Assembly: GCA_002269645.1 (NCBI GenBank)
Contig: NIVC01000347.1
Span: 1 to 64,000 of the forward strand
Source: Macrostomum lignano
Taxonomy: Eukaryota
Length of the DNA stretch: 64,000 bases
Direction: 5' to 3'
This document shows positions 18,255 through 59,256 of the stretch, piece after piece. The notes under the pieces were generated by a model. It ran no database searches, was not told the DNA's origin, and saw only the letters and a list, made by a program, of their open reading frames with translations. The position numbers and the translations under genes were made by a program. Within the stretch, counting starts at the first letter, position 1, and the number at the start of each line of letters is the position of its first letter.

Positions 18255-19904
18255 CTGAAGTATAAAAAACAATTTTGATACAATGATATTGGGCCAATGG
18301 ATAGGAACTAAGTAGATTTAAATTGCATATAAACTGTGCCCCCAAAACATTCCACAGCAGTTAGCAAAAGGTCTGGTCAACTAAATGATATGTAAGTATA
18401 AATTACAACCCTACAATTGCCAAGTTTATTAATTTGTAAGTCCTTGTGGAGAACTGATAAAAAATGCAATTTTTGCCCATGTTCACTTTGCCAATGTTGC
18501 CACTCTGGGCAACTGCATTCAGGACATGTTTCATAAAGTCTGTACAAGACCAGACTTCACTGGTTGACAAAAATTACAAAAAATTACAATACTTGAAACT
18601 TCTTATTTAAATGTAAAAATATTGCAGTAATTATAATTTTTCATACAATGATGATTGTAATAATTATCAGCAAATTTTAAGTCCTTGAATGGCTACTAAA
18701 TTGTGGTCAGGGAGTTAGTAAAAAAATGTCATATTTTTCATTAGCTCTTTTATTTATTTGACAAAGTATATCAAAACTTTTGATTAACTAAAATCTTTTA
18801 ATATTTCCCTTGTAATTAATTGTAGTAATTCTTATGTTAGCTTTAAACAATTGCAAACATTTCGAAATTTCAATCAATGATTAAAATGTGCACAGCCTTT
18901 TGAAAAAACAGTATTAATTGTATCTAACTCTTTGTCTACCTTAGGGCCTATTTGAAAAAAGGTATTGCTTGGATAATGTTTTTGTTTTAATGAAAAGCAA
19001 CTTTTTTCAGACCAAAGTAATGTAAATTATTTGATCTCTGATTTGCTCTCCCTACCTACCCCTTGCTCTCCCTAGCTACCCCCTACTCTCCCTAGCTACC
19101 CTTGCTCCTTAGCTACCCCCTGCTCTCCCTAGATTCTCATTGGTCCCTTCAATTACTCAACCTCCCCTTGCCTTCTCTAGCCATCTTGTCTTCTATCTAC
19201 CCAGTGCTGACCCTAGAAAGTAGCTATCCCATAGCTTTTTTATCACTTTTTTCTGAATTGGTTTTGATTTTAGTAGTGTTGACAGTTAATTATTCTTGAT
19301 TTGCATATTTTTGTTAACTATTATTTTTTAACATTAATTTTTTAAGTTAACATTAAGCACATATAGCAAAGGCAAGAGTTTTCTATTCTTCTGATTACTT
19401 TTGTTGCCTGCACTATAGTCTTTTACCATTCTCAGATCTCAGTTGTCTGACTTTTGTAGAAAATGTCATTATATTACTTATATATTGACCAACTGCTCTA
19501 CAATAGCTGCATGGCCACACACCAAGATGGCCACAGCTGGGGTGGGGGTCACGGAAAATGACAGCTGGTTTATTATTGGATAGCTTCGGGTGGGGAGATG
19601 TGGGGTTGCAATGGGGGGGGGTTTAGACAGGCAGTCAAAATTTTATTAGCATATTGCAGGGCTAAAGACAAAAATGGTCACGAGTCTTAATTTCCTACTT
19701 ATAGTGGGCCCTAAGAGGTATAAATGTATTTTCCATTAAACAAATCTCTTCTTCATATAAAATCTGGTGTAGCTTTTTTCCATTTCTCTTATTGGTCGAG
19801 ACTAATTTATTTGTTTAAAGGGATAAAAACTGGGTAAATTTCATGCCCTGTTCAAAATTCATCTGTCTCATTCACTGACAGCAGTCTAAGCACTTAGATA
19901 CAAA

Positions 19905-22049: not shown

Positions 22050-25000
22050 TCAGAAATACTGCATCGACGGCCGGGCCAGGGCCGCCGGCAGCTCTGCCTC
22101 GCTGCCGCCGAGATGCCGGGCGATCTCGATTGCGGCCAGGTGTACAGCGAATGGGCGGCTCGGTTGCTGCAGGTCTGGACCGCCCAGACGAACGGCTTCT
22201 TCGAGCAGCGCCGCGCGCTCTTCCATTGTCGTCCAGCGCAGGCTGCTCCAGACAGGTCCAGCGAACACCTGGGGCCAATGACCGTGTCGAGCCGCGGCGA
22301 CCAGGAGGTTGCGCGCCAGACCAGCACCGGCCATCAACAGAGCCGCCCGCGCTTCGTCGGTGGGCGAAGCTGGCTCCGGGTCGGCCGTTTGCGTGCTGGC
22401 ATTCGCCATCGTTGGCGGATTCTCTGGCGTTGACGGTGGCGCACGTGGTAACTCGCGGCTCAGTGCGGCCGTCAGGCCGTCCCACAGACCGGCCGGCTCA
22501 GCCGATTCCTCTTGGCCGGCTCTCGGCGACGGGGCGCCTTCGACCAAGGACATGGGGGACCCGGGCTGCGGGGGGTCCCTTGGGCCTCCGGCGACGGCCT
22601 CGCTAAGATCATTTCGGTGCGCCTCCAGGTGGCCGGGCTCCGGGTCGGGATCTGGAAAGGTGGCTCGTATCTGGCGGCGGACCGCGCGTAACCCGCGGCT
22701 CACCTCCTGCTCTAGTTGAGCATAGGCAAGGGCAGCTGCCAGCCGCTGAGCCGTGAGCCGGCGAACCGGGGCATCGCCCGGTGGCGAGTCACCCGTGAGG
22801 TCAATGACCTCGGGGAGTTCCACGCGGACCGTTCCTCGGGCTCGGTGGCTAGGTCGGCTCCGTCGCATCTCGGGTGATGGGGAGTCGTTGCGACTCTCTC
22901 GCTCCCTCCCACGCCGGGGTGGGCGCACCGGGTGCTCCTGACCATCGGGCTGCAGCAATTGCCGCGACGCTAAAGGTCGGCGCGGGATACCCATGACCTC
23001 CGGGGAGGACGGGGTTCCCTGCCTGTGGCGGCTCCGGCTAGGCCGACCCTGCTCATCCTCAGAGGACGCGCTTGAGTTCGCCTGATAAGGACGCTTGTGC
23101 ATTGCTGCGCTGAAATGTTTTAATTTGTGCACACGCATGCGGGCGGTGCGACTGACGTACGTTTTGGCCCTAGGATCGGTAATCAGAAGCCTCTCCGGCG
23201 GCCTCCGATCCCTAACTGGCCTACCTACCACTACTGGTATGGGAGACGCTTCCACCTGAGTGGTGCAAGAAGGTGGCGCAGGAGACTGCACCGCCGAAAA
23301 AGGTTCGGGAAGGGGGAACGCATGGACAGGTGAAAAAGAAGCAGCAGGTGCAGACGCATTCAAACCAGGCACACCATCATGGCGATCACCATACGGCAGT
23401 GGCTCACGCCGAAATGCACTTGCCTGGTTCGCTGGTGTCGTGACCGGTCCACCTCCTGGCCGCACATCCGGGATCGCCAACGGCCGGAAGTGCCACCGGA
23501 AGGCCGGCCATGCGTCATCGTCATCATCATCATCGTCGGGATCGTCCTCCGGGATCGGTGTCAGGGTCGCGGGTCCTGCACCGTCCGGGACATCAGTCGA
23601 CCTGCGGTGCTTCTTGGCCTTGTCGACTTCTGGATCTGAAGTCAGCTGGTAGTCGGCATCAGGTACGAGTAGCAGATTCCGGCGATGGACTACTAGCTCG
23701 TCGCGCCTGGCCCGCGGGTTTGGCACTCTACGGCGAATCTTGTAGACGACCTCGCCCTTGGGTTCGACTACCTCGTACAGCGCTTTGCGAGGTCGATGGA
23801 ACTTCGCCGCTTCATCCGGTTCGAGCACCGGGTTGTTGAGGAAAACCAGGTCACCAGGTTGGAGCTTCTTGGCGGCGGGCAGGTTCGAATAGTGCTCGTC
23901 GCGCAGTTGCTGATGCAGATGCAGGCGTTCTTTAGCTAGCTCAGTCGCTTCGTCTAAACGGCGCTGGAAGTCCTTGACATAGTCAGGCAGATTGGCATAC
24001 TCCGGCAGCTTCTTGATCGCGTTGTCGATTGGTAGTCGAAAGTCTCGACCAAACACCAGGTAGTGAGGCGTGAAACCTGTCACCGGGTGTACACTAGAGC
24101 GGAGCGCCATCAAGCAGGCTGGGAGGAAGGTGTCCCAGTCGTTATGGTTGCGCTCGAGGAGGCAGGTGAGGACACTCTTCAGCTGCTTGTTGAGGTTCTC
24201 GACTTGCCCATTTGAAGCTGGATTGTACGGTGTTGTCGTCGTATGCCGGATGCCAAACAGGTCGCAGAACTTCTTGAAAGCTGAGCCAGTGAAATTGGTT
24301 CCTTGATCAGTGTGTATCCAGCATGGTACACCAAAGTCAGGGATCAAGCGCTCCTGCAGGATCTTGATGACCGTCTTGGCTTTCTGGTTCCTCATCGGAT
24401 AGGCGAACGGGTACTTCGACGTCGCGTCGCATAGCGTCAAGATGTAGCGGTTCCCGCTCTTGCTCTTCTGGGCAATTGGGCCTACTACGTCGCAATGTAC
24501 TCTTCCCAGGACTTCGCACACAGGGAAGCTCTGTACAGGTACTCGGTCTCGTCTTCGGGATTTACTTTCAAGACAGGCGCGGCACTTACTGATAAAGTTC
24601 TCGGTGACACGGGCTAATCCGGGCCTCCAGAATCGTTCACGTAGCCGCTTCAATGTCTTCGTCTGGCCGAGGTGTCCACACAGTGGCGAACTGTGAAGCT
24701 CCTGGAGCACCTGGGCATCTAGAGCTTCGGGCAGGACAACCTTCGGGGGCTGCTGGCCATCAGTCAGATCGATCATCAGCAGGCCGTTGTCTTCTCGCAG
24801 ATTATCATAATATCCGAGCAGATTCCGCTGCTCCTTCGTCAGTCGCAACCGGGCGTCGAACTCAGGCTTCGGGACTTTGTTCTCGACCAAGTTGAGTACG
24901 TAGCTGATTGCTCGGTCGGCGCGCTGCGCGTCGACAAACTGTTGCCGCGTCATCGGCAACCTCAGAAAATCAGTGAGCACGGCGCGGCATGGCTGAGGGT

Positions 25001-28000
25001 TCCGGATTTCCTCAGTCTCCGCTTCTGTGGCTCGCAGTTGATCACGCGACTCCGTCTTGTCGGCGTCAGGATTAGGTCGCTCCGAGGGACTTTGTCTCAC
25101 CACGTCGGCGTACGATCGCTGATCTCGTTTCGAAGTTCTCATCGTCGCTCTCTTGACAGGAATTTCCGCAGCTGGAGCAGTGCACTTGCCTCCACTGCAC
25201 AGCCCAGGCGACTCTTGGCTGTAGGGCGAGACGCAACACGTGAAGCACGCCTCGTCGCAGGCAGCCGTAGCCGTCGGCTCGATCATCGTCGTCATTGGGT
25301 GAGTCTTCTCCAGCACTGGGCGGTGTCGCAAAGGGGGACTCGACTTTCCGCACAGGCGATGAGCAGCTGTCTGTCGGCTCGGGGGACAGAGCGTTGACCT
25401 TGCAGCCGTCGCGAGAGTCTGGCCTCTGTCAACACGGCGAGAACTCTCAGCGCAAAACTCCGGGGAGTTGAACTTACATTGCTGGTCTGGATTCGCGTTG
25501 TAGGCTGTCATCAGGAGGGCTGCTTGTTCAGTGGCCTCTGAGTCGTGGTCCATGGGCGTCTCCAGATTCCGAGACCCGCAGTCTTGGACATCATCAAGGA
25601 GGTCCACGTCAGCAGTGGCCTCCGAGGCTTTGTCCGGGCGAATCTCCAAGGAACGGCAGTTGGCGTGGGCGTCGCTGTGGAGGGCTGAGGGGTCAGTGGC
25701 CTCCGGGTTGGTGTCCAAACCGGTCTCCAGGCGTTGACTGCAGCGATGGTCGTCGTGCTGAAGGGCTGCTGGCGCAGTGGCCTCCAGGTCTTCGGCCAGG
25801 GCAGTTTCGGCCTCCTTGTTGCGAGTGTGGACCTTCTTCGTGCGGGCTGCTCTCGCAGTGGCCCCACGTGTGGTGTCCAAGTCCGGCTCCAGGCTGGTGT
25901 CATCACCGGGTCGGGCTGCAGAACCGGGGTGCTCCAGCAGTCGGCCATGTTCGAAGTCAACCGGTGGTGTCTCCGGGCGTCTTGACAGGGCGTCAGCGTT
26001 GGCGTGGTCCTTGCCTTTGCGATGGTGAAGCTGGAAGCGGAACTCGCTTAATCGCTCAATCCAACGGCCCAAGATGCCTGTGACCTGAGTCTGGTTCAGC
26101 AGCCATAGCAAGGCCCGATGGTCAGAACGAACTTCAAACTTCTTGCCGATTAAATAATGACGGAAATGTCGCATCGCGTCCACGATTGCAAGCAGCTCTT
26201 TCTTCGTGACCGTGTAGCGCTTCTCAGGATCACGAAGTTTCCGGCTAAAGAATGCAATTGGGCGCTCGACGCCGTCGGATTGCCGTTGTCCAAGACAAGC
26301 GCCTATGCGAATGTCTGAGGCATCAGTGTCTAGGACAAACTTCACACCAGGATCTGAGTTAAATTCAGGCAGAGCGAGAACTTCAGTCGAACACAACTTC
26401 TTCTTCAACGTGTCGAACGCTACCTGGTGCTCATCAGTCCAACGCTGCCGCAGGCTGCCGATGTCCTTTCGAGTCAGGGCATGCAGCGGCGCAGCAAATC
26501 CAGCGTAGCCGTTGACAAACTTGTGGTAGTAATTGGCGAGGCCTAGGAATTGTCTCAGTTGAGTAACGGACTGTGGCACGGGCCAATCACGGATCTGCGC
26601 AATCTTGTCCTCACAGGTCTTCAGGCCGTCGGGAGTCACGACGTGTCCTAGATAATGCAGCTCCTTGAGGAACAAATGGCACTTCTTCGGCTTGACCTTG
26701 AGGTTGGCTGCGATAATCCGCTGGAGTACAGTCCGCAGGTTGTCCAGCTGCTCCTCGAAGGTCACTGAGTGCACCACGATGTCATCCATGTAGCCGAGCG
26801 CAGTCTTTGGCGTCAGGCCGTCCAGGAGCTTATTGATGCAACGCTGAAAGCTGCCTGGACTATCGTGGAGACCCATCGGTAGAACATTGAAACAGAATTG
26901 TCCGCGGTCAATCACAGAGAACGCCGTCAGGTGCTGATCGCAGTCGCGCAGCGGGATCTGCCAGAATCCTTGCGCGAGATCCAAGCTAGAGTACCACTGG
27001 GCACCACGCAGCTTCGCGAAGGTCTCCTGAATGTGCGGCAGCGGGTACGGGTGGTACACACACTTGTCGTTGAGAGCTCTGAAGTCATGCACCAGCCTGA
27101 TGTTGCCGTCCTTTTTGGGCACTATCAGCATTGGCGAGTTGTAGCTAGAATAAGCCGGGCGAATGATGTGCTTCGCCAGCATCTCGTCTAGCAGGGCGTC
27201 TAGCTTGTCCTTCAGATGAGGCGGGATCCTGCGCGGTGGTAGTGCAACTGGTGTCCGATCCTTCAGGATGATCTCGTGGGTCACCAGGTGTGTCAGGCCA
27301 GCGTCTAGCAGGTGCTTCGAGAAGGCTGCTTGACACTCAACTAGTAGATCTCGCACTCTCTGTCGTTGATCTTCGGACAGCTCGCTGTTGATCTCGACTT
27401 CCTCTAGCCAAGCTGTGCTGGACTCTTCAGGGCTCCTTGGCAAATGTCGCACTTCAGGTTCCGGCGTCTCTTCCAGGTACATCAGGTCGGCAGTTCTAAG
27501 TGGTGTCGCAACACCAACGCGGATGCCCGACTGCAGGAACACCTCGCAGTCAGCAGTGTTGACAACCTCGATGTAGCCTCGACCTTCAGGCATCGTCATC
27601 AGAGCTGGAGCTGCTTCCAGAGTGTTGCAGCTGGGGTGCAGTCTCGACTTCACCAGCTCGACGATTGATGGCGATCCTCGGTTCTCGGGGTGGCCGACAT
27701 CCAACTGGACGGCCAACAGCGCTGAACTTCTCGGCGGCAGAGTGCACTTCTCGGAGGTGTACACCCGGCATGATTGAAGCTCACGGCGCGAATAGCGAAC
27801 GGGAATGCACGCGCCATTGTTGAACTTTAGCATTCCTTGAGCAAAGTCCAAGTTCTGGCAGTGCTCGCGCATGAAATTAATACCAAGCAAATTTTCACAA
27901 TCGGTGACCGTGACCAGGAATTCGGTGTCCGCGACGACATCACCGAACTCCACCGGGATGATCACCTTACACGCAAGGGGTAGCTGCGTACCGTCGTACA

Positions 28001-28391
28001 TGGTCACGCAATCCGGGATAGCATGCGATATAATACAACGAGGCATCCGACGTCTAACATTGGCCCAGGTCGACGCTCCAAGAAAGTTTTTCCGACTGCC
28101 GCTGTCTAGTAGGAAAGGGACTTCTCGGCCCGCCAATCGGCCGGTGACGTACGGATCAGCCTCACGCGCATGGATTTTTTGATCATTGGAGGTGTCCACG
28201 AAACCTCCGCACTCAGCCTCACTTACTGATGAGCGACTGTCGGACTGGGCATTGGCGCCTGCGCAGCCGACATCCTCTTCTTCTGGTGAGCGTTCGGAGT
28301 CTGCCAAGTAGCCGGGGCTTGGGCTTTTCGGAGGGCGTTGCCGTGGGCGCTCTCCGTCTCGCCGTTTCCCTGGTTCTGGCGTAACGGGCAC
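22050..28391 (-). CDS. pol: Pol polyprotein (protease, RT, RNase H, integrase, long C-terminal extension), reached by -1 frameshift
   Basis: LLDSGS (protease); LDLAQGFWQI and YMDD (RT); LDTDASD...ELLAI...DALSR (RNase H); H..GH...C..C, VHCDVVGP, HTDQGTNF and NGQVENLN (integrase). 2113 open codons. Confidence 0.97.
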   Translation of the reverse strand: MPVTPEPGKRRDGERPRQRPPKSPSPGYLADSERSPEEEDVGCAGANAQSDSRSSVSEAECGGFVDTSNDQKIHAREADPYVTGRLAGREVPFLLDSGSRKNFLGASTWANVRRRMPRCIISHAIPDCVTMYDGTQLPLACKVIIPVEFGDVVADTEFLVTVTDCENLLGINFMREHCQNLDFAQGMLKFNNGACIPVRYSRRELQSCRVYTSEKCTLPPRSSALLAVQLDVGHPENRGSPSIVELVKSRLHPSCNTLEAAPALMTMPEGRGYIEVVNTADCEVFLQSGIRVGVATPLRTADLMYLEETPEPEVRHLPRSPEESSTAWLEEVEINSELSEDQRQRVRDLLVECQAAFSKHLLDAGLTHLVTHEIILKDRTPVALPPRRIPPHLKDKLDALLDEMLAKHIIRPAYSSYNSPMLIVPKKDGNIRLVHDFRALNDKCVYHPYPLPHIQETFAKLRGAQWYSSLDLAQGFWQIPLRDCDQHLTAFSVIDRGQFCFNVLPMGLHDSPGSFQRCINKLLDGLTPKTALGYMDDIVVHSVTFEEQLDNLRTVLQRIIAANLKVKPKKCHLFLKELHYLGHVVTPDGLKTCEDKIAQIRDWPVPQSVTQLRQFLGLANYYHKFVNGYAGFAAPLHALTRKDIGSLRQRWTDEHQVAFDTLKKKLCSTEVLALPEFNSDPGVKFVLDTDASDIRIGACLGQRQSDGVERPIAFFSRKLRDPEKRYTVTKKELLAIVDAMRHFRHYLIGKKFEVRSDHRALLWLLNQTQVTGILGRWIERLSEFRFQLHHRKGKDHANADALSRRPETPPVDFEHGRLLEHPGSAARPGDDTSLEPDLDTTRGATARAARTKKVHTRNKEAETALAEDLEATAPAALQHDDHRCSQRLETGLDTNPEATDPSALHSDAHANCRSLEIRPDKASEATADVDLLDDVQDCGSRNLETPMDHDSEATEQAALLMTAYNANPDQQCKFNSPEFCAESSRRVDRGQTLATAARSTLCPPSRQTAAHRLCGKSSPPLRHRPVLEKTHPMTTMIEPTATAACDEACFTCCVSPYSQESPGLCSGGKCTAPAAEIPVKRATMRTSKRDQRSYADVVRQSPSERPNPDADKTESRDQLRATEAETEEIRNPQPCRAVLTDFLRLPMTRQQFVDAQRADRAISYVLNLVENKVPKPEFDARLRLTKEQRNLLGYYDNLREDNGLLMIDLTDGQQPPKVVLPEALDAQVLQELHSSPLCGHLGQTKTLKRLRERFWRPGLARVTENFISKCRACLESKSRRRDRVPVQSFPVCEVLGRVHCDVVGPIAQKSKSGNRYILTLCDATSKYPFAYPMRNQKAKTVIKILQERLIPDFGVPCWIHTDQGTNFTGSAFKKFCDLFGIRHTTTTPYNPASNGQVENLNKQLKSVLTCLLERNHNDWDTFLPACLMALRSSVHPVTGFTPHYLVFGRDFRLPIDNAIKKLPEYANLPDYVKDFQRRLDEATELAKERLHLHQQLRDEHYSNLPAAKKLQPGDLVFLNNPVLEPDEAAKFHRPRKALYEVVEPKGEVVYKIRRRVPNPRARRDELVVHRRNLLLVPDADYQLTSDPEVDKAKKHRRSTDVPDGAGPATLTPIPEDDPDDDDDDDDAWPAFRWHFRPLAIPDVRPGGGPVTTPANQASAFRREPLPYGDRHDGVPGLNASAPAASFSPVHAFPLPEPFSAVQSPAPPSCTTQVEASPIPVVVGRPVRDRRPPERLLITDPRAKTYVSRTARMRVHKLKHFSAAMHKRPYQANSSASSEDEQGRPSRSRHRQGTPSSPEVMGIPRRPLASRQLLQPDGQEHPVRPPRRGRERESRNDSPSPEMRRSRPSHRARGTVRVELPEVIDLTGDSPPGDAPVRRLTAQRLAAALAYAQLEQEVSRGLRAVRRQIRATFPDPDPEPGHLEAHRNDLSEAVAGGPRDPPQPGSPMSLVEGAPSPRAGQEESAEPAGLWDGLTAALSRELPRAPPSTPENPPTMANASTQTADPEPASPTDEARAALLMAGAGLARNLLVAAARHGHWPQVFAGPVWSSLRWTTMEERAALLEEAVRLGGPDLQQPSRPFAVHLAAIEIARHLGGSEAELPAALARPSMQYF

Positions 28392-29392
28392 TGTGCATTG
28401 CGATGACCAGGCTGACCGCAGCCATAGCAGATCATGGCTTTCGAAGGCGGACTCGTCTTCTGCTGCTGGTCACGCTGCACCAGGTTGTCTAGCAGTCGTT
28501 GTTGTTTCTCTAGCAGATCAGTCAGAGCTAGGAGAGCTTGAGCGGTGGCGTCGGGCGTCGGGTCACCGTCGCGCTCCCCGTTCAGCATGCGAACCGGGGG
28601 TTGAGCAGAGCGCTGCGCCAGTTCTTTAGCGCCTTCCAGACGATGGAGTTCTCGAATAGCGGCCAGCAGATTGTTCGGGCGGACCCAATAGAGCCGCTCG
28701 CGCAGATCTGGTGTCGTCCTGATGCCAGCTAGGAACTGATCAGCCAGCTCCCGCTCTCGATCGTCAGGGTGCATTCGAGGGTACGCTCGCTCTCCCAAGG
28801 TGCGCAGGGCATCAGCGTACTCTTCTGCTGACTCGTTCTTGCCTTGCTGACGGCGCCTCAGCAGCTCTCGATATTCATCCGCGCCACCGTGGCGGGCGAA
28901 TCTCTCGATCAGTCGCTGCCTGACCTCCTCGTAGCCAGCATAGCGTGGGAGGTGCATACTGAGCAGAGCCGGGTAAGCAGTAGCCAGATCTAGACTCGCA
29001 ACGAGGTGCTGCTTCATCTCGATCGGGTCTTCAATACGCTCCATCTCGCAGCGTTGCTCGAACGCGGCGAGCCAGACATGGATGTCCTGGCTGGGCGTGT
29101 ACTTTACAATCTTAACAGACTTGCTTACCGGCCGCTCCATCTGCTGCTGCAGAGCTGCCATCATCGTTCTCACATCCTGGGGCCTGATGTTCTGGCCGAG
29201 GTCGTCCAAACCTGGCAGAAGCTCGTCTGGCGGGTCTTCGGACACTTCGCTTCTCGCACTTCGCCGCGGCATCTGCTGACCAAGGTCGTTGACCGCTGCT
29301 GCTGCGGCAGCCGATGCTGCTGCAGGTCTCGAACTGCTGATGTGCTGATCCAGCCGGCTGCTGCACCGGCTCTCTTCCCTCTCGTTAAACAT
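28223..29392 (-). CDS. gag: Gag (389 aa)
   Basis: Capsid-like region (WLAAFE...RRQQGKNESAEEYADALR.L..RAYP) and CCHC knuckle CYGCGQPGHRNAQC. Confidence 0.95.
   Translation of the reverse strand: MFNEREESRCSSRLDQHISSSRPAAASAAAAAAVNDLGQQMPRRSARSEVSEDPPDELLPGLDDLGQNIRPQDVRTMMAALQQQMERPVSKSVKIVKYTPSQDIHVWLAAFEQRCEMERIEDPIEMKQHLVASLDLATAYPALLSMHLPRYAGYEEVRQRLIERFARHGGADEYRELLRRRQQGKNESAEEYADALRTLGERAYPRMHPDDRERELADQFLAGIRTTPDLRERLYWVRPNNLLAAIRELHRLEGAKELAQRSAQPPVRMLNGERDGDPTPDATAQALLALTDLLEKQQRLLDNLVQRDQQQKTSPPSKAMICYGCGQPGHRNAQCPLRQNQGNGETESAHGNALRKAQAPATWQTPNAHQKKRMSAAQAPMPSPTVAHQ
28326..28370 (-). promoter_or_regulatory. -1 programmed ribosomal frameshift signal
   Basis: Slippery heptamer G GGA AAC (28370-28364) in the gag frame, with pol in the -1 frame. 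About 7 nt downstream is a stem-loop CGGAG-A-GCG / CGC-C-CUCCG. Confidence 0.8.
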
Positions 29393-41423: not shown

Positions 41424-44128
<2,705 letters not shown>

Positions 44129-44712: not shown

Positions 44713-45758
44713 GAGCATGCACCTGGAGCTGCCGGCAGTCAACCTTGACCTGGTGTTAAGGTTGACTTCCTGTATTATAAGCCTTTAGTGTATGCCTCTA
44801 GTATAGAAAAAGTCTAAGTGACTTTGATAGTTTAGACATTAGTCTATGAATGTAAATCAGGTGCCATAAAATTTGATAGTCCTTATAACACCATTCCAAA
44901 AATAAATATGGTTATAAAGAGAACAATTAGAATATATCAAGGTATTTTCTTGACTAGTAATATACTTAATACTTATAGCATTCTTATTATGCTTATTAAT
45001 TATTTTATATAAGTGGTTTTTACCTTTATTTTATTAGCCTCAAGTTTTCATGTATATTTCTTAAAAAAATATTTTACTTGTTCAAGTAATAAAGTTAAAA
45101 ATTATCTTTGTCCTTAGGTATTAGCAACCAAGATAAGAGAATTTTAGTTGTTATAAAAAATTATATTTAATAATATTGATAAAAAGAGTATGATTTTTTG
45201 GATGTATTTTGTTTCACTTTAATTTGCTTTTCAATATGCTATTTATCAGTGGTATACAGTATTTTTTTCCACTTATAATTGAAACAATAACAGCCTTGAA
45301 TGTAATCGCAATCTTTTTTAAAATATTTAATTATCTTTATTATATAAGTTATGTTACAAACAATGGAAAGTAAGCTTCAAAAAAATATATTTAAGAAAAG
45401 AGGATTCTATTAAACTATTTAAAACATTGCCATTTATCATTATAATAGTATTTTCACTTTAATTGCAACAGTTTAATTGCATTATATTGTTGTTAGTATT
45501 AGTACTATAAGTCAAAAAGGCAGTTATTTTGTAGGAAAGAAATGATTTGCATTTGCCTGGCTAACAGTAGTCTAAGGTATGCTAAGCAAGGTCTACTATC
45601 GTGGACCTTAATGCTAAGCTTATTTAAATACCATAAGAAAATTTTTGCTCCTATTATTTTTAGAATTTTGATGCTAATTTAGATATAACCAAACTGAAAA
45701 TGCATGGCTATATAATTGCTCATATTTTATTTATATATTTGCATGTGCCCGGGCCAGA

Positions 45759-48700
45759 ATGAGTGACAAAAATTTGCATGAGCCACTGCTGAAAGACTCG
45801 CAAGATCTGCAACAGCATCCCAGCGCTATAACATCAAATGATTATGATGATGTCTTGATAGGCTACTATAAATTTAGCAGCACTGCTCACGCTGCCCTGG
45901 AACGTTTCTCTAATTGCTTCAAACAGCTGTGCATTGATGATATTGCTAAACTGGATTTTGTTCTTGAGAAGCAGCTGTTGGATCAGTCTGCTTTTGCTAG
46001 CATTGACGAGTTTCTCTTCCGGATTTTTGAAAGTAGTCAGGTAGGTATATATTGTAGTATTTGCTGAAAGAATGAAATTAGGAGTGAATGAGGCAGTCAG
46101 CTTATCAGGATGGGATGAATGGGGCAGTCAGTCCCTCAGGATGGGGTGAATGGGGCAGTCAGTCCCTCAGGATGGGGTGAATGGGGCAGCCAGTCCCTCA
46201 GGATGGGGTGAATGGGGCAGCCAGTCCCTCAGGATGGGGTGAATGGGGCAGCCAGTCCCTCAGGATGGGGTGAATGGGGCAGCCAGTCCCTCAGGATGGG
46301 GTGAATGGGGCAGCCAGTCCCTCAGGATGGGGTGAATAGTGTGGAGTCTAGCTCCAAATGAATAAGAATAAGATTGTGCACGAGTGTGTGTGAGCCTCGT
46401 AGGCCAGCTCGATCTTGGTTCGTAGCTTCCTACAGAGGCGCCAGGCCTCGGGCTTCTTTATTTATCTCTCTCTGCTTCCCAGCTTGGGGGAAGACAACCT
46501 CGTCCAGTGGCCTGGCCTCGTCCAGTGGAAACTGCAGGTAGCATTCCGACAGGTCCAGCTTGGAGAAGATCTTGCCGCCGCCAACCGCGTCGTAGAGCTC
46601 CTCTGGCGTCGGCATAGGGTAGTGGTCGATCTTCAGCTGCGGGTTCAGCGTGACCTTGTAGTCACCGCACAGTCTGATGGTCCCGTTTGGCTTGCTTACG
46701 GGCACGACCGGAGTCGCCCAGTCGCTATGCCGAACGGGCTCTATCACCCCTACTTCCTGCATCCGCTGCAACTCCGCGTCGATCTTGGACTTCAGGGCGT
46801 ACGGCACGGGTCGGGCCTTGCAGAACTTGGGCAGCGCGTCCTCTTGCAGCCGCAGCTTCACATTGTGCTGGGTGAAGTTGCCCAGGCCCGGCTCGAACAC
46901 GTCCGCAAACTTCTGCAGCAGGCCGTCCAACTCTGGTGGCGCTGTTGGCGTAGCTGAGATCTCCGGTGGAACTGGATCGCTGATGGCGAAGATCTCCTTC
47001 CAGTTCAGCCGAATGTTCCTTAGCCAGTCCCGGCCCATTAACGGGCTTGCCTTCTCTAGGCTGGTGACTATCAGGGGCAGCTCGCAAGTCTGCGTGCCGT
47101 ACTGCACTTCCACATTCGCAGACCCCAGCACTGGGATGCTCTCGCCTGTCCAGGTGCGCAGTTGAACCTCGGCGTTCTGTAGTCGCGGCCGACCCAGCTG
47201 CTTCCAGTGGTGCTTAGATACGAGGCTGGCGCAAGCTCCGGTGTCCACCTGCATCCTCAGCGGTCGCCCGTTGATGTGTAGCTGAGCACTCAGGTGCCTT
47301 TCCTTACCGCTGCAGACCTGGGAGATCCACGTCACCTCTGCCGAGTCGTCGCTTTCCCCGCCGCGGTGCTCCTCGCTCTCGTCTGGGTGAACGGCCCTGA
47401 TGGACTTTCTGTTCTTGTGGCCACTGAATTTCAAGCCGCTTTGCTGACTGCTAGGAGCCCCTCCGGCGCAGGTCTTTTGGCTCGATAGACAGACGGCCTT
47501 CAAGTGGCCCAGCTTGCCACAGGCGTGACACTTGGTGTTCCGGTGCTGGCACTCCGCCGACAGGTGCTGCCTGGAGCCACAGCGCATGCACGGCCGTCGT
47601 GGTGACGCGGCTTTACCGACCAAATTGACCTCCGGCTTGGCGCGCCAGCTGTTGGCCTCCGCTTCCGCGATTTCTGCTGCTTGAGCGATTTCCTTTGCCT
47701 TCTCGAGCGTCAAGGTGCTGACAGTCAACAACCGCTTTTGCACTTGCGGCTCCTGGAGTCCACAGACGAAGCAGTCCCGCAACGTGTCTTCCAGAAAAGT
47801 TCCGAAGTCGCAGGTCTCCGCCAGACTGCGGAGGGTGGCCAAAAACTGTGCAGCCGACTCTCCGTCCTTCTGAACTCGCTTGTAGAAGCGAAACCGCTCA
47901 GCAATGACCGGCTTCTTTGGCTGGAAGTGGTCCTTGAGTAGCTTTACCAGCTCTTCGTAGGACAGATCAGAAGGCTTCCCTGGCGAGCACAGATTTCATA
48001 GGGTTGCATAGCATTGGCGGCCGATCAATGTTAGAAAAACCGCCTTCTTTTGGCTTTCGTCCTTAATTCTGTTTGCGCTCATATAGAGGGCTACACGTTC
48101 CTCGTAGGCGCACCAGTCTTTTCCCTCCTCGAAGGGCTCGACTGTGCCGATAGCGGACATCCTCGTCGCCACTGTGGAGTCTAGCTCCAAATGAATAAGA
48201 ATAAGATTGTGCACGAGTGTGTGTGAGCCTCGTAGGCCAGCTCGATCTTGGTTCGTAGCTTCTTACAGAGGCGCCAGGCCTCGGGCTTCTTTATTTATCT
48301 CTCTCTGCTTCCCAGCTTGGGGGAAGACAACCGGCAGGCCTGTTATTGGGGGTGCGGGGTGCAGACAGACAGACTTGTGCATAGGACTTGTGCGTGCATT
48401 GGCCGTACAGTGATGACTGTAACGGCTAGACAAAGACCGGTGCCTGGTGGGACTGAGGAGTGCGAGTACGAGCTAACCGATAGACAGACACTACAAATAG
48501 GGCAGCCAGTCCCTCAGGATGGGGTGAATGGGGCAGCCAGTCCCTCAGGATGGGGTGAATGGGGCAGCCAGTCCCTCAGGATGGGGTGAATGGGGCAGCC
48601 AGTCCCTCAGGATGGGGTGAATGGGGCAGCCAGTCCCTCAGGATGGGGTGAATGGGGCAGCCAGTCCCTCATGAATATCTGTTGCTGAAAGCAGGGCTGC

Positions 48701-51700
48701 TGAACCCTCCTCTCCAACAGGTGACCGTGAGCAGGCTCATGACCACAATGGCTGAGGATGATCGCTACCGTGAGTTGCGACAGAGCATCACAGACTTGTT
48801 CCGGGTGACTCGCAGCGACAGCCTTCGGCGCTACCTGCAGCCGGGGAGCTTCGTAACAGCCCAGACGCTGACGAGAGACCTGCACTGCAGCCTGCTGCTG
48901 TCCAACTTTGACCTGTTCAACTCGGACACGTTCCAGCCTCGCCGACATCTGGTTGAGGGCTACATCGAAAAAATGGGGGATGCTGACCGGGGCAACGTCA
49001 TCAGGGGTTACTCTGGTCTGCTGCAGCTCGCGGGGCTGACCCAGCTGGACCAGTATAGGACTACAGTGAGTCTGCAACCCTCCCAGATCGGCAGCTATCC
49101 ACAAATGCACAGTGACACACCAGACACAAAAAAGCATAGAGTGACACACCAGACACAAAAAGCATAGAGTGACACACCAGACACAAAAAGCATAGAGTGA
49201 CACACCAGATAAAAATAAGCATAGAGTGACACACCAGACACAAATAGCATAGAGTGACACAACAGACACAAATAAGCATAGAGTGACACACCAGACACAA
49301 AAAAGCATAGAGTGACACACCAGATACAAAAAGCATAGAGTGACACACCAGACACAAAAAGCATAGAGTGACACACCAGACACAAATAAGCATAGAGTGA
49401 CACACCAGACACAAAAAGCATATAGTGACACACCAGACACAAAAAGCATAGAGTGACACACCAGAGAGTGACACACCAGACACAAAAAGCATAGAGTGAC
49501 ACACCAGATACAAATAAGCATAGAGTGACACACCAGAAACAAATAGGCATAGAGTGACACACCAGACACAAAAAAGCACAAAGTGACACACCAGACACAA
49601 ATGCAATGAGACACACCAGACACATGCATAGAGACACACCAGACACAAATGCATAGAGACACTAGACACATGCATAGAGTGACACACCAGACACATTGCA
49701 TAGAGACACACCAGACACATGCATAGAGACACACCAGACACATGCATAGAGACACATCAGACACATGCATAGACACACCAGACACATGCATAGACACACC
49801 AGACACAAATGCATAGAGACACACCAGACACAAATCCAATGAGACACACCAGGCACAAATGCATAGAGACACACCAGACACATGCATAGAGACGCACCAG
49901 ACACATGCATAGACACACCAGACACATGCATAGACACACCAGACACAAATCCAATGAGACACACCAGGCACAAATGCATAGAGACACACCAGACACATGC
50001 ATAGAGACGCACCAGACACATGCATAGACACACCAGACACAAATGCATAGAGACACACCAGACACATGCATAGAGACACACCAGACACATGCATAGAGAC
50101 ACACCAGACACATGCATAGAGACACACCAGACACATGCATAGACACACCAGACACAAATGCATAGAGACACACCAGACACAAATGCATAGAGACACACCA
50201 GACACAAATGCATAGAGACACACCAGACACATGCATAGACACACCAGAAACAAATGCATAGAGACACACCAGACACAAATGCAATGAGACACACCAGACA
50301 CAAATGCAATGAGACACACCAGACACAAATGCATAGAGACACATCAGACACATGCATAGAGACACACCAGACACATGCATAGAGACACACCAGACACATG
50401 CATAGAGACACACCAGACACATGCATAGAGACACACCAGACACAAATGCATAGAGACACACCAGACACATGCATAGACACACCAGACACAAATGCATAGA
50501 GACACCAGACACATGCATAGAGACACACCAGACACATGCATAGAGACACACCAGACACAAATGCATAGAGACACACCAGACACATGCATAGACACACCAG
50601 ACACAAATTCACTCTGTCCCCCACCTCTGCTCCACCCGCAGTCGGAGATTCTCCGCACCGCCCTGGATCGAGTCAGGGACCGCAGAATTGAGGAGGTCCT
50701 GCGCTCGATTCTGGAGCCTCGCGACGGCTTCCAGCTGCTTCGCCTTGGCCAGCTCATCGCATTCTGCTTGGGCCAGCCGGCCCTGACAGTGGAGCCCAGC
50801 CCGCCCGGCTTCATCCGCAGCTTCCTCCGCGGCCTCATCCAGCAGTGCAACCCGGCCAATAATGCCCGAATGACTGGCGTCGGTCCCAGCTCTGTTGCTA
50901 TGCAATTCGTGCTCAGACTGCGCTCCTCTGTGCTGGTTGTTGACGAATACCCGGGCGGTCAGCCGAGCACCAACTTGAGCCGCCTCATCTGCATGTTTCA
51001 GCAGGACCGCGCCGAGGCCGTCAACCTGGCCGATTACCAGGTGTACGTGGCACCCTACTGCGCTGACGAGTGCACCAGGGCTCAGCATTTTGGCAGCGAC
51101 GAGAATCTAATGACACTGTTTGCCAATGAGCAGCTCAATAATGTGAGCTGATCTGACATTTATTGACACCTGACAGTCATTTGACGCATCTGACACCCAC
51201 CTGACACCTACCTAAACTCACCTGACACTTACCTAAACTCACCTGACACCTACCTAAACTCACCTGACACCTACCTAAACTCACCTGACACCTACCTAAA
51301 CTCACCTGACGCCTACCTAAACTCACCTGACACCTACCTAAACTCACCTGACACCTACCTAAACTCACCTGACACCTACCTAAACTCACCTGACACCTAC
51401 CTAAACTCACCTGACACCTACCTAAACTCACCTGACACCTACCTAAACTCACCTGACACCTACCTAAACTCACCTGACACCTACCTAAACTCACCTGACA
51501 CCTACCTAAACTCACCTGACGCCTACCTAAACTCACCTGACTCCTACCTAAACTCACCTGAAACCTACTGAAACTCACCTGACTCCTACCTAAACTCACC
51601 TGAAACCTACTAAAACTCACCTGACTCCTACCTAAACTCACCTGAAACCTACTGAAACTCACCTGACACCTACCTGAACTCACCTGACACCTACATAACC

Positions 51701-52112
51701 TCACCTGACGCCTACCTAAACTCACCTGACACCTACATAACCTCACCTGACGCCCACTGAAATCCCACAGCCCTCAGTCCGAGCCGTGGTATTTTTCATT
51801 GGCGCAGACATGGCTGCCAAATTGGACCAGTCAAGCAGTCTGGAGAGCCGCATGCTGAAGGCCTGTTTCGGTCAGCCACGCTGCGAAGTGCTCATGCTCA
51901 TGGACGAAGGCGTGGACCTGTCCGAAAAGGCCCAGTCGCGAGTGAACTGGCAACAAGCCAACCGGTTCGTGCTGTCTGTTCCTGACGATGAAATTGAATG
52001 GCGCAACTTCCTGGTACGACTGGCCAACCTGCCTGGGCCGCCGCTGCCTCCGCAAACGCCAATGTTTGACCAGCCGGAGTCTGTCAACAGCGTCTCCGTT
52101 GTTGCAGTGTAG
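45759..52112 (+). CDS. 489-aa protein, putative death-fold (CARD-like) N-terminus + TIR/SEFIR-like C-terminus, 4 exons
   Basis: Exons 45759-46040, 48721-49065, 50642-51142 and 51771-52112 with canonical GT-AG sites, all phase 0, giving an open frame. The gene model is strong. Domain identity is inferred only from secondary-structure-like patterning. Confidence 0.75.
46340..48495 (-). mobile_element. Internally deleted Mag-type Ty3/Gypsy LTR retrotransposon (2156 bp)
   Basis: Full 5' LTR 48173-48495 (TG..CA); truncated 3' LTR 46340-46499; 5-bp TSD AATAG (46335-46339 / 48496-48500). Single gag-pro-RT frame from ATG 48160 with one TGA at 47996-47998, two Cys/His knuckles, MQVDTGA protease, and RT ending at LDLSECYLQFPLDE. 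Confidence 0.95.
48158..48171 (-). other. Primer binding site, tRNA-Ser(GCU)-like
   Basis: TGGCGACGAGGATG is complementary to the tRNA-Ser 3' end CATCCTCGTCGCCA. The gag ATG lies inside it. Confidence 0.8.
49107..50610 (+). repeat. ~22-29-bp minisatellite (GACACACCAGACACA[A/T]..GCATAGA) filling intron 2
   Basis: Two sub-arrays: ..AAAAAGCATAGAGTGACAC.. and then ..ATGCATAGAGACAC... Source of the CVWCVS/CLVCL ORFs. Confidence 0.97.
51180..51755 (+). repeat. 21-bp minisatellite CACCTGACACCTACCTAAACT filling intron 3
   Basis: ~27 units; the shadow ORF repeats SLGRCQV. Confidence 0.97.
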
Positions 52113-56627: not shown

Positions 56628-59256
56628 TTAAGCCTCTCGTTGCAACTCAGACTTATTCTTCTGGTTCTGAGCACCAGAAGCAGATAAACTTGAGACGCCA
56701 ACTCCATCGGAGAAGACGGCCCACGTCTCCTCAGCGAACTCTGCTGCCAGATGCGCCACGTCGTAGGCCGCCCTTCGACACTCTCCGCCTCCCGACCAAT
56801 CAGATTTGAGCTGCTGATTGAGCCCCTTGACTGCAATCTCAGTCGAGTGCTTCTCGCTGTTTACTGGGTAGACCCAGCGGACAATCCAGCTGTCCTCACT
56901 TGACAGAATTCTGTGCTCACGACTCACCATGAAGTTAAAGACGTCTCTGGTGTCTCTCGATTGGTGAAAGTTGGGATCAATTCGCTTCAATTCTTCTAGC
57001 AGGCATTTTCGCACCTTTTCAAGCGATGCAGCATCTTTGTTTTCTTTGAGCAGCTTCATCAGCGACTCGAGCTCGAATGCCTTCCGCTCTGTCTCCGAAC
57101 TCAGCTGTTTGAACTGCTTTTTATAGTCATCTCCAAGCTGCTTCTTTAACTGGCCAAACGCGTGAGGGTATGAAAACTCTCGACCCGATCCCTTAAGCCG
57201 AACTGCCAGCGACCGATCGAGGACTTCCTTTGCCTCCTTCAGCACCGAGACGATCATGTTGTTCATTTCTTGAAGTCCTATGTCAGTCTCTTTTATCTGC
57301 AGCTTCGTCATGAGAAATCGATTCGATCTCATGAGGTTTCCGCGATCGCCAGCGCCTTCAGCTGACCGAGTCGAGCCCGCCTTGCTCGTTAGCAGATTGA
57401 GCTCCAAGAACTCAAGCAATTCTGAGCTTTACAGACTTCTTGAAATCGTCCGAATCCAATTCAGTTTCAATAAAGAAGCTGCTGGAATCGTCCAGAGTGA
57501 GTTCGATCTTGGCGCACAGGTCGTACAATTCTCGGCGGAAGAACAGCGGGTCTTTTCCAGCTTGAGATGATGTTGACGCATCCGCCATCACCCTTTCGGC
57601 AGTTTTCTGTTCGGACTTTCGACGCTCGAGAATGTCGAAAATTCGAGGAGCCGCATCGCGACATCCGCACTCGAGACACTCCATCAACTTCGTCAAATCT
57701 GAGGCGGGGTCTCTGAGTAGCGACTCAGCTATCAGTGCTTGCTTGTTCTCGTAATCACTGGACAATTTTCTAAAACTTGCAGCGGCCTTAGAAAATTCAC
57801 CATTCTTCATAAAATGGCGACCCAGATGCTCCAGAGCGAAATCGTTTTTGTCGTCTCGCCCCAGAGCCGTCCTGTAGAGGCCTTCGACGTCGAGCTGAAC
57901 TTTGAATGTCCCGATGTTTTCGGCGTACCAAGCCAGGTACTCTTCAAACCCTTCCTGATTCTGGTTCAGCAGTCGAAGAAAGTTTTCCTTCTGGTTGGGC
58001 CATATTTGGTCCAAGGTTTTCTCAGCGTCAAAGGCAGCAACGCACGATTCTACAGCCTCCTTTGTTTCTCCAATTTTCATTAGGTACATGGCCTTGTAAA
58101 ACTCGACTGTGGCGACATTTTTGTTGTAGACCCTAAAGGTTTCTCGCAGAGAGTCGTACGCGTCTACAGCTGTGTCTTTTCCCCATTGTTCTCGCTGAAG
58201 CTCTATAATTTTCAACTCAATCCAGATGTGACCCGGCTCACCTGCTTATTCCTGGCCCTCTTCAAGCAGCTGGACCGCCTCCTCTCTATGGCCGGAGCTT
58301 AGAGCTTCTTTGGAAAGCTCAAGGAAGAATCCAGGATCGTCAGATACGCTTGCCACTTCTTTAGCATCCTCAAACAGCCGATTTCTAATGGCCTTTAAAT
58401 TGTTTGAGTTTGACTTTCTTAAAAGATACCGAAACACTTTCAGGCAAATTATGTACACGACTTGTGACTGCTCTTTCTGCTCTTTATCCATTCCTAGTAG
58501 AAGATTTGCAGCCTTTTCGGCCAAGCCTTGGCACAGACTGGAATACCGGTAGTTGTGCAGAATGGCTTCAGCATAGTTCGCGTAGAATGTAGCCGTCGTG
58601 AGACCTTTCTTCTCACCGACGTCTTTTGCCCTTCTCCATAGGTCCAACTGAACTCTGTCAGCGTGTTTATTAGCCGTCTGCCTATCGCAACGAGCTCTTA
58701 AGTAGGCTTCGCCATAGAGCCAGTAGAAGTTGCACGCCTTGCTGTGGTCCAATAGGATCCTTGACGCCTCGGCGAAGGCACTGGCGCCAATGGCGTATTT
58801 CATTGGACCAAAGCAGTCGAAAGCGACTCCCTTCGCTGCAAACGCTCGAGCCTTGCTGTTTGGGTCGAGTTCGTTCAGTCTCTGCATGTCTGTTTCGAGT
58901 TCTTCAGGTCTTAGTGGCCTGCCTTTTCCTCTGCTCAGCTGCTTGAGGTGCAGCATGTCGGCCCTGATAACCAACTCGCTTGACACCATGCAGTCTTCCT
59001 GACTGTCTTGCTGTATTTGTGCATCAATTTCCAACGCTTCATCGAGATGTTTCTTGGCCAAGTCGAACTTTTTGACGCGTCTGCGAGTGTACAGGTATGC
59101 TATGGTTGCCAGGTATGCGGCCTTTTTGTGAGGCTCGCGCGTTATCTTTTTCTTCGTCTTTTCGATCACTTCATCGATGTTTGAGTTTGTGCAGTTATCA
59201 TCTGGTTTCCAGGTGAAATGGCACTCCAGCTGGTCTAGCGACTGCAGGCTAGTCAT
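56628..59256 (-). pseudogene. IFIT-like TPR protein with extra C-terminal domain (~875 codons, intronless); one in-frame TAA and one frameshift
   Basis: N-terminus SLDQLECHFTW...LATIAYL...ELVIRAD...AKGVAFDCFGPMKYAIGASAFAEA parallels IFIT SLEQLRCHFTW...NLLAYV...LVTWGN...[23 protein letters not shown] (recalled). ORFs 58246..59256 and 57412..58215 are in one frame separated only by TAA 58246-58248. ORF 56628..57419 continues after a +1 shift near 57420-57435. Confidence 0.82.

What the first reader, a model, noticed from the sequence alone, without database searches (positions are those of the whole stretch)
45759..52112. Unannotated 489-aa putative death-fold + TIR/SEFIR signalling adaptor hidden among repeats
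The ORF track breaks this gene into pieces fused to repeat-derived junk, but four exons splice cleanly. Residues ~40-125 show a CARD-like pattern (LDFVLEKQLLDQSAFASI...FLFRIFESSQ..VSRLMTTMAEDDRYRELRQSI). The C-terminal ~200 aa alternate beta and alpha like TIR/SEFIR (SVLVVDE / NLSRLICMFQQ / VYVAP / LFANEQLN / AVVFFIG / EVLMLMD / RFVL / EWRNFLVRLAN). That architecture would be a MyD88/Act1-like adaptor.
Basis: inference. Interest (0 to 1): 0.7.

Follow-up and report, generated by a model that had tools for sequence, protein, structure and literature searches.

The report
Annotated flatworm orphan gene, fold unresolved
The four-exon gene is real and under selection. It is already in GenBank as a hypothetical protein of the flatworm Macrostomum lignano, and neither a death fold nor a TIR/SEFIR domain could be demonstrated in it.

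Summary
The window is the first 64 kb of contig NIVC01000347.1 of Macrostomum lignano. That protein is identical to residues 4-492 of GenBank PAA85098.1 (Mlig014298g1, "hypothetical protein"), so the gene is not unannotated. Two other genomic copies keep the same junctions. They differ from the window copy by 18 synonymous and 5 non-synonymous changes (dN/dS 0.08), so the gene is functional.

No homologue exists outside M. lignano in any library searched. Pfam, NCBIfam, PADLOC and PDB sequence searches found nothing. AlphaFold without an alignment gave poor models (pLDDT 37 and 47). They suggest a helical N-terminal ~290 residues and a C-terminal five-unit beta-alpha domain (~304-461).

Tests for TIR were weak and contradictory. 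A six-seed TIR HMM scored 5 bits, and the signal vanished when any one seed was dropped. hhalign was at chance for TIR and slightly favoured a receiver-like match. Foldseek mixed TIR, receiver, flavodoxin and GTPase hits. Death-fold tests were at chance. UniProt names two older models "TIR domain-containing protein", but no search here reproduced that. Verdict: a real, ordinary orphan gene, with the adaptor reading unproven.

The parts
45709..45737 (+). Two TATATA motifs, 41 and 18 nt upstream of the annotated 5' end (45750), in a 25% G+C stretch; candidate core promoter
   Evidence: Regex and G+C counts; gene range 45750-52112. Promoter function is inferred, not tested.
45759..46040 (+). Exon 1, codons 1-94, ATG at 45759, donor GTAGGT
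   Evidence: 98.2% identical to copies g2/g3
46041..48720 (+). Intron 1: a 31-bp minisatellite (46084-46337 and 48496-48671) interrupted by a retroelement fragment
   Evidence: the intron is 1015 and 1022 nt in the other two copies, where the array is uninterrupted
46338..48495 (-). Retroelement fragment inside intron 1: 160-nt direct repeats (46340-46499, 48173-48332) and a minus-strand ORF 46430-47842 with a zinc-knuckle region and a gag-type aspartyl protease; not part of the gene product
   Evidence: (PF13975, E 3.4e-10)
48721..49065 (+). Exon 2, codons 95-209, acceptor CAG, donor GTGAGT
49066..50641 (+). Intron 2, almost entirely 28-bp and 23-bp tandem repeats (49111-50605)
50642..51142 (+). 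Exon 3, codons 210-376: end of the helical region and the first two predicted beta-alpha units of the C-terminal domain
51143..51770 (+). Intron 3, a 21-bp tandem repeat (51198-51751)
51771..52112 (+). Exon 4, codons 377-489 plus TAG: the last three predicted beta-alpha units and a proline-rich tail

Best explanation
This is Mlig014298.g1, a real and already annotated protein-coding gene of the flatworm Macrostomum lignano. It has four exons separated by minisatellite-filled introns. It encodes a soluble, acidic 55-kDa protein with no detectable relative outside this species. The product most likely has a helical N-terminal two-thirds (about residues 27-290) and a C-terminal domain of five beta-alpha units of the flavodoxin-like type (about 304-461), followed by a proline-rich tail. 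My inferred mechanism is that the C-terminal domain is the working module. It would be a small parallel-sheet domain of the class that includes TIR and receiver domains, acting by self-association or by binding a nucleotide-type ligand. The helical part would regulate it or dock partners. Shown here: gene structure, identity with a transcript-based annotation, purifying selection, and absence of detectable homologues. Inferred from weak models: the domain layout. Not resolved: which flavodoxin-like superfamily the domain belongs to. TIR is the leading candidate, at roughly one chance in three.
For: Splicing and frame. Identity to PAA85098.1, and window = NIVC01000347.1:1-64000. The GenBank annotation of this assembly derives from an RNA-seq-guided transcriptome (PMC5730564). 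Copies g2 and g3 keep all GT-AG junctions, with 18 synonymous and 5 non-synonymous differences, dN/dS 0.08. Exons are 98-99% identical between copies, against 86-92% for intron-1 flanks that also vary in length. GC3 is 0.68, against 0.25-0.36 G+C in the flanks. There is no transmembrane-grade hydrophobic stretch, and pI is 5.1. The five-unit beta-alpha topology appears in both AlphaFold runs. Foldseek hits on the C-terminal model are all three-layer alpha/beta domains, including TIRAP (rank 2, E 2.2e-3), MilB (best TM-scores, 0.50/0.58), a receiver domain, flavodoxin-type domains and SARM1 TIR. A TIR six-seed HMM scores 5.0 bits on residues 286-469, reached by 1 of 3000 shuffles, with no signal in the N-terminal or middle segments. 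UniProt's own name for two older models is 'TIR domain-containing protein'.
Against: Both structure models are of low confidence (mean pLDDT 37.0 and 46.9), so the domain layout could be wrong. No Foldseek match reaches E<=0.001. The TIR HMM signal vanishes on leaving out any one seed, with 5-31% of shuffles then scoring as high. hhalign against the TIR seeds is at chance, with 51% of shuffles scoring as high. A receiver-domain alignment scores marginally better, with 3.7% of shuffles as high. Pfam, NCBIfam and PADLOC give nothing at E<=10. No expression or phenotype data were found for this gene.
Confidence: 0.6

Rival explanations
1. One reading: a MyD88/Act1-like adaptor with an N-terminal death-fold (CARD-like) domain at residues ~40-125 and a C-terminal TIR or SEFIR domain, signalling by homotypic assembly.
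For: The N-terminal region is predicted helical, at low confidence. The C-terminal region alternates beta and alpha. UniProt names two older models TIR. Flatworms lack Toll-like receptors but keep TIR-domain proteins (PMC8609888; PMC7958881).
Against: No Death, CARD, DED, PYRIN, TIR or SEFIR Pfam hit at E<=10, on the whole protein or on three pieces. CARD and death-domain seed HMMs score within the shuffle range, with 6-36% of shuffles as high. The predicted helices run unbroken from about residue 27 to 290, not as a discrete 90-residue six-helix bundle. TIR evidence is fragile.
Confidence: 0.07
2. A highly divergent TIR-domain protein: a TIR at the C-terminus joined to a lineage-specific helical region with no death fold. 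It would act as an oligomerising adaptor or as an NAD+-cleaving enzyme.
For: UniProt name. Six-seed TIR HMM at 5.0 bits, placed in the right register (profile beta-C to box 3 against residues 380-455), reached by 1 of 3000 shuffles, while receiver and GTPase control HMMs give nothing. TIRAP, SARM1 and a plant TIR are among the Foldseek hits. A DEYPG motif at 310-314 resembles the BB-loop RDxxPG.
Against: The leave-one-out test abolishes the HMM signal. hhalign is at chance. The two methods place the TIR in registers one beta-alpha unit apart. There is no FW box and no Glu at the aligned catalytic column. No Pfam TIR family hit appears, even on the UniProt models themselves.
Confidence: 0.3
3. 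The C-terminal domain is a degenerate receiver-like (CheY-type) or other flavodoxin-like module unrelated to TIR, used only as a structural or binding unit.
For: hhalign against six receiver seeds aligns residues 302-461 colinearly with profile columns 2-123. The score is 17.6, reached by 3.7% of 600 shuffles. VLVVDE at the end of strand 1 and LSVP at the end of strand 5 echo the receiver motifs. A receiver domain and flavodoxin-type domains are among the Foldseek hits.
Against: hhalign probability is only 1.1%. The receiver seed HMM gives nothing in hmmsearch, with 53% of shuffles as high. The sensitive Pfam Response_reg model gives no hit. The conserved Thr/Ser of strand 4 and Lys of strand 5 are absent.
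Confidence: 0.15
4. The reading frame is a chance or decaying ORF (pseudogene or transcribed repeat-associated sequence) with no protein function.
For: There are no homologues outside the species and no domain hits. The gene sits among repeats and retroelements.
Against: dN/dS is 0.08 between copies that differ at 5.4% of synonymous sites. The 489-codon frame is intact and all six splice sites are canonical in all three copies. The annotation is transcript-based. GC3 is 0.68.
Confidence: 0.03

Closest known systems
GenBank PAA85098.1 (BOX15_Mlig014298g1) and its copies PAA48281.1 (g2) and PAA75148.1 (g3); UniProt A0A1I8G9I5 and A0A1I8FWE7, named 'TIR domain-containing protein'
   Same: PAA85098.1 is the same gene at the same coordinates. 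Its residues 4-492 are 100% identical to the spliced product. g2 and g3 differ at 5 residues.
   Different: GenBank marks the model 5'-partial because three codons of leader (RAR) are translated ahead of the ATG. The UniProt models, from the older assembly, splice past the stop codon into an unrelated 77-residue tail. One of them (A0A1I8H7C7) is fused to an antisense translation of the gene's own exons.
TIR domains (MyD88, TIRAP, TLR2, SARM1, plant L6 and RPS4)
   Same: Similar size (~160 aa) and a predicted five-unit beta-alpha layout. There is a weak profile match over beta-C to box 3, and TIRAP and SARM1 appear among the Foldseek hits.
   Different: No significant profile match, no box 1 or FW box 3, no catalytic Glu in the aligned column, and a signal that is not robust to seed choice.
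Receiver (CheY-like) domains
   Same: Colinear hhalign match over all five beta-alpha units, with an acidic pair after strand 1.
   Different: The match is marginal, with 3.7% of shuffles as high. The conserved Thr/Ser and Lys are missing, and neither Pfam nor the seed HMM gives a hit.
Death-fold domains (CARD, death domain)
   Same: Only that the N-terminal region is predicted helical.
   Different: No profile signal beyond chance, and no discrete six-helix unit in the model.

Membership tests
TIR domain (Pfam PF01582/PF13676; PROSITE TIR profile) | Significant match to a TIR sequence profile | tested here: not met
   No Pfam family at E<=10 for the whole protein, three overlapping pieces, or the three UniProt models. 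Nothing in PADLOC or NCBIfam. The PROSITE profile that probably underlies the UniProt name could not be run here.
TIR domain | Weak but specific and robust similarity to a profile of diverse TIRs | tested here: inconclusive
   The six seeds were validated against PDB chains. hmmsearch gives 5.0 bits on residues 286-469, reached by 1 of 3000 shuffles, and nothing on the N-terminal or middle segments. Every leave-one-out profile loses the signal, with 5-31% of shuffles as high. hhalign scores 11.7 against a shuffle mean of 12.1.
TIR domain | Five-stranded parallel sheet with five helices (flavodoxin-like), about 125-200 residues | tested here: inconclusive
   The AlphaFold single-sequence model of residues 284-467 shows five beta-alpha units, but mean pLDDT is 46.9. 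Foldseek places TIRAP at rank 2 (E 2.2e-3) and SARM1 at ranks 16 and 46, mixed with NMNAT, MilB, flavodoxin, receiver and GTPase hits. None reaches E<=0.001.
TIR domain | Box 1, BB-loop (RDxxPG), box 3 (FW), and a catalytic Glu in helix C for the NADase class | tested here: not met
   Only a DEYPG motif at 310-314 resembles the BB loop. There is no FW. In the HMM alignment the catalytic column aligns to Arg, not Glu.
TIR domain | Self-association or NAD+ cleavage | not testable with these tools
   Needs recombinant protein.
SEFIR domain (PF08357) | Match to the SEFIR profile | tested here: not met
   No Pfam hit at E<=10. No separate seed profile was built.
Death-fold superfamily (CARD, DD, DED, PYD) | Match to a death-fold profile | tested here: not met
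   No Pfam hit at E<=10. CARD (4 seeds) and DD (3 seeds) HMMs, with seeds validated against PDB, give best scores of 1.6 and 0.3 bits, reached by 6-14% of shuffles on residues 1-140 and 30-130.
Death-fold superfamily | Discrete six-helix bundle of about 90 residues | tested here: inconclusive
   The model is helical from about residue 27 to 290, but pLDDT is 30-41 throughout, so no fold can be read from it.
MyD88/Act1-like adaptor | Death-fold or equivalent module plus a TIR/SEFIR module in one chain | tested here: not met
   Neither module could be demonstrated (rows above).
Receiver (CheY-like) domain | Profile match and the conserved Asp pocket, Thr/Ser and Lys | tested here: not met
   hhalign scores 17.6, probability 1.1%, reached by 3.7% of 600 shuffles. 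The seed HMM gives -4.0 bits, with 53% of shuffles as high. Pfam Response_reg is absent. Lys of strand 5 and Thr of strand 4 are not conserved.
P-loop NTPase | Walker A motif [AG]xxxxGK[ST] | tested here: not met
   No such motif and no GK dipeptide in the protein. The GTPase seed HMM gives -3.8 bits.

The most novel reading that the evidence does not exclude
The C-terminal domain is a real but extremely divergent TIR, fused to a Macrostomum-specific helical module. That would be a lineage-specific TIR signalling or NAD+-consuming protein in a phylum that has lost Toll-like receptors. It would add a TIR architecture not seen elsewhere and a handle on how flatworm TIR proteins signal without receptors.
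Probability: 0.25. Interest if true: 0.45.

Novelty: already known. Interest (0 to 1): 0.2.

Why it matters
The finding matters little as it stands. The gene model is already public and carries an automatic TIR label in UniProt. This work adds three things: the model is sound and under purifying selection, the TIR label cannot be reproduced with Pfam-type profiles, and the death-fold idea has no support. Should the domain prove to be a TIR, the gene would be a candidate for receptor-independent TIR signalling in flatworms, which lack Toll-like receptors but keep some twenty TIR proteins in planarians (PMC7958881). M. lignano is transgenic-tractable, so the question is testable.

Tried and rejected
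1. Homologue hunting found only the M. lignano cluster itself. This covered the word-indexed search, an exhaustive phmmer of 1.84 billion representatives, a C-terminal-domain-only search at E<=10, a metagenome contig scan and tblastn of the window for paralogues. No alignment could therefore be built for structure prediction.

2. PDB sequence searches of the whole protein and of the two halves at E<=10 gave only a spurious MraZ hit at E 0.18.

3. I suspected an N-terminal TIR because YDDVLIGYY (29-37) looks like box 1. The TIR seed HMM gives -1.9 bits there, with 18% of shuffles as high, so I rejected it.

4. The hhalign and BLAST register that puts DEYPG on the BB loop and YCADEC on the WC..E motif looked attractive by eye. 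It scores at chance against shuffles, so I rejected it as evidence.

5. Foldseek on the full-length pLDDT-37 model gave only generic vWA and Rossmann-like hits at E>0.07, which is uninformative.

6. The MyD88 TIR search of the protein database returned only vertebrate MyD88, too narrow for a profile. I used PDB-validated seeds instead.

7. A literature and supplement search for Mlig014298 found nothing.
Full report
**Source of the window.** The locus returned for GenBank protein PAA85098.1 is contig NIVC01000347.1 of the Macrostomum lignano Mlig_3_7 assembly (GCA_002269645.1). Positions 35750-62112 of that record are base-for-base identical to window 35750-62112. The window is therefore the first 64 kb of that contig. 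The organism is a free-living flatworm.

**The observation.** Reading the region and locating the junctions gives four exons: 45759-46040, 48721-49065, 50642-51142 and 51771-52112. Each intron starts with GT and ends with AG, and every exon starts in phase 0. The joined 1470 nt translate without interruption to 489 aa plus TAG.
- The mechanical ORF list does show four fragments, each running on into repeat-derived codons.
- Each intron is essentially one minisatellite: 31 bp in intron 1, 28/23 bp in intron 2 and 21 bp in intron 3.
- Exons are 42-61% G+C with GC3 of 0.68, against 25-36% in the flanks. Two TATATA motifs lie 18 and 41 nt upstream of the annotated 5' end.

**The gene is already annotated.** The only database cluster hit by the spliced protein contains six M. 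lignano entries.
- PAA85098.1 (BOX15_Mlig014298g1, "hypothetical protein, partial", 492 aa) equals the spliced product preceded by three translated leader codons. Its gene range in the record is 45750-52112.
- The GenBank annotation of this assembly was derived from a genome-guided transcriptome built from RNA-seq and a de novo assembly (PMC5730564). By inference, then, the junctions rest on transcript evidence. I could not inspect the reads themselves.
- Two UniProt entries from the older assembly (A0A1I8G9I5, A0A1I8FWE7) are named "TIR domain-containing protein". They read past the stop into an unrelated tail.
- A third entry (A0A1I8H7C7) is fused to an antisense translation of the gene's own exons and is named for an ankyrin-repeat profile.
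- None of the three has any Pfam hit at E<=10. The names probably come from PROSITE profiles, which is my inference.

**The gene is functional.** Copies g2 and g3 lie on other contigs (loci L003 and L002) and keep all four exons and all GT-AG sites. They are identical to each other in coding sequence. They differ from the window copy at 23 positions, 18 synonymous and 5 non-synonymous, giving dS 0.054, dN 0.0045 and dN/dS 0.08. Introns differ much more, at 86-92% identity, and in length: 2680/1576/628 nt here against about 1015-1022/1151-1204/303 nt. The extra length of intron 1 comes from a 2.16-kb retroelement fragment (46338-48495). It has a minus-strand gag-type aspartyl protease and 160-nt direct repeats. 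It is inserted into the 31-bp array only in this copy.

**No relatives.** None of these searches found anything outside the species:
- the word-indexed search of 5.8 billion clusters;
- an exhaustive phmmer against 1.84 billion representatives;
- a search with the C-terminal domain alone;
- a metagenome scan;
- tblastn of the window.

Pfam, NCBIfam and PADLOC return nothing at E<=10, for the whole protein or for pieces. PDB sequence searches return nothing meaningful. At the sequence level the protein is an orphan.

**Fold.** Without an alignment AlphaFold performs poorly. The full-length model has mean pLDDT 37.0, and residues 284-467 alone give 46.9 with pTM 0.42. Both runs agree on the secondary-structure layout.
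- Helices run from about residue 27 to 290.
- Five beta-alpha units follow: strands 304-310, 341-345, 379-386, 415-421 and 441-446, and a last helix at 450-461.
- Foldseek on the full model is uninformative.
- On the C-terminal model no hit reaches E<=0.001. The top fifty hits are all three-layer alpha/beta domains of several superfamilies: NaMN adenylyltransferase, TIRAP TIR (rank 2, E 2.2e-3), MilB (best TM-scores, 0.50/0.58), flavodiiron flavodoxin domains, a receiver domain, small GTPases, SARM1 TIR and a plant TIR.
- There is no Walker A motif and no membrane-grade hydrophobic segment.

**Direct tests of the proposed families.** I built small profiles from sequences whose accuracy I first checked against PDB chains. 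I then compared the real protein with composition-matched shuffles.
- *TIR, six seeds.* The N-terminal and middle segments give nothing. Residues 286-469 score 5.0 bits, reached by 1 of 3000 shuffles, while receiver and GTPase control profiles give nothing. The alignment puts profile beta-C to box 3 on residues 380-455.
- *TIR, robustness.* Every leave-one-out profile loses the signal, with 5-31% of shuffles scoring as high. hhalign against the same seeds scores 11.7 against a shuffle mean of 12.1. It also picks a register one unit away.
- *Receiver seeds in hhalign.* They give a colinear match to residues 302-461 with score 17.6, reached by 3.7% of 600 shuffles. Probability is only 1.1%, and the conserved Thr and Lys are absent.
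- *CARD and death-domain profiles.* On residues 1-140 and 30-130 they score within the shuffle range, with 6-14% of shuffles as high; residues 120-295 gave 19-36%.

The C-terminal domain is thus probably flavodoxin-like. Its superfamily is undetermined, and the death-fold proposal has no support.

**Interpretation.** The best reading is a lineage-restricted, functional cytosolic protein. Its working part is a small parallel alpha/beta domain, possibly a very divergent TIR, joined to a species-specific helical region. The MyD88/Act1-like architecture is not established. Flatworms lack Toll-like receptors (PMC8609888) but retain TIR-domain proteins (PMC7958881). A divergent TIR here would therefore fit, but that is context, not evidence.

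**Verdict.** The gene is already public and is ordinary for this repeat-rich genome, so interest is low.

Noticed in passing
window 13645-18272, minus strand: ORFs with a DEAD/DEAH helicase domain (13645-15603, E 5.5e-22) and a PIN-like DDX60 domain (17442-18272, E 4.4e-30). This looks like a DDX60-like helicase gene, a family tied to antiviral innate immunity in vertebrates, lying about 27 kb upstream of the finding.
   Followed up: partly
window 22053-29392, minus strand: A 2113-codon open frame with reverse transcriptase, RNase H and integrase domains, plus an adjacent 389-aa ORF with no Pfam hit. This looks like an intact Ty3/gypsy-type LTR retroelement. It was only scanned against Pfam, and not assembled or printed.
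   Followed up: partly
window 46338-48495: A retroelement fragment (gag-type aspartyl protease, 160-nt direct repeats) inserted into the 31-bp minisatellite of intron 1 in this copy only. The g2 and g3 copies have an uninterrupted array, so the insertion post-dates the duplication. It has no nucleotide similarity to the element at 22-29 kb.
   Followed up: yes
window 46084-46337, 48496-48671, 49111-50605, 51198-51751; L002 and L003 introns: Each of the three introns is almost wholly one minisatellite, with a different unit in each. The intron-1 array is present in all three gene copies, and all three introns differ in length between copies (the g2/g3 arrays of introns 2 and 3 were not inspected).
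   Followed up: partly
window 50609-51088, minus strand, and protein P0006 (UniProt A0A1I8H7C7): The G+C-rich exons carry long antisense ORFs. One older UniProt model fuses such an antisense translation to the real protein and is named for an ankyrin-repeat profile. This is an annotation artefact.
   Followed up: partly
window 58246-59256, minus strand: A called single-exon gene of 336 aa with no Pfam hit, about 6 kb downstream of the finding.
   Followed up: no
window 1830-2419 and 43124-43821; strong G and A excess at 30-34 kb, 36-38 kb and 42-44 kb: A 25-bp G-rich tandem array and a ~700-bp degenerate (AG)n tract. Several kb-scale purine-skewed stretches suggest further simple repeats.
   Followed up: no
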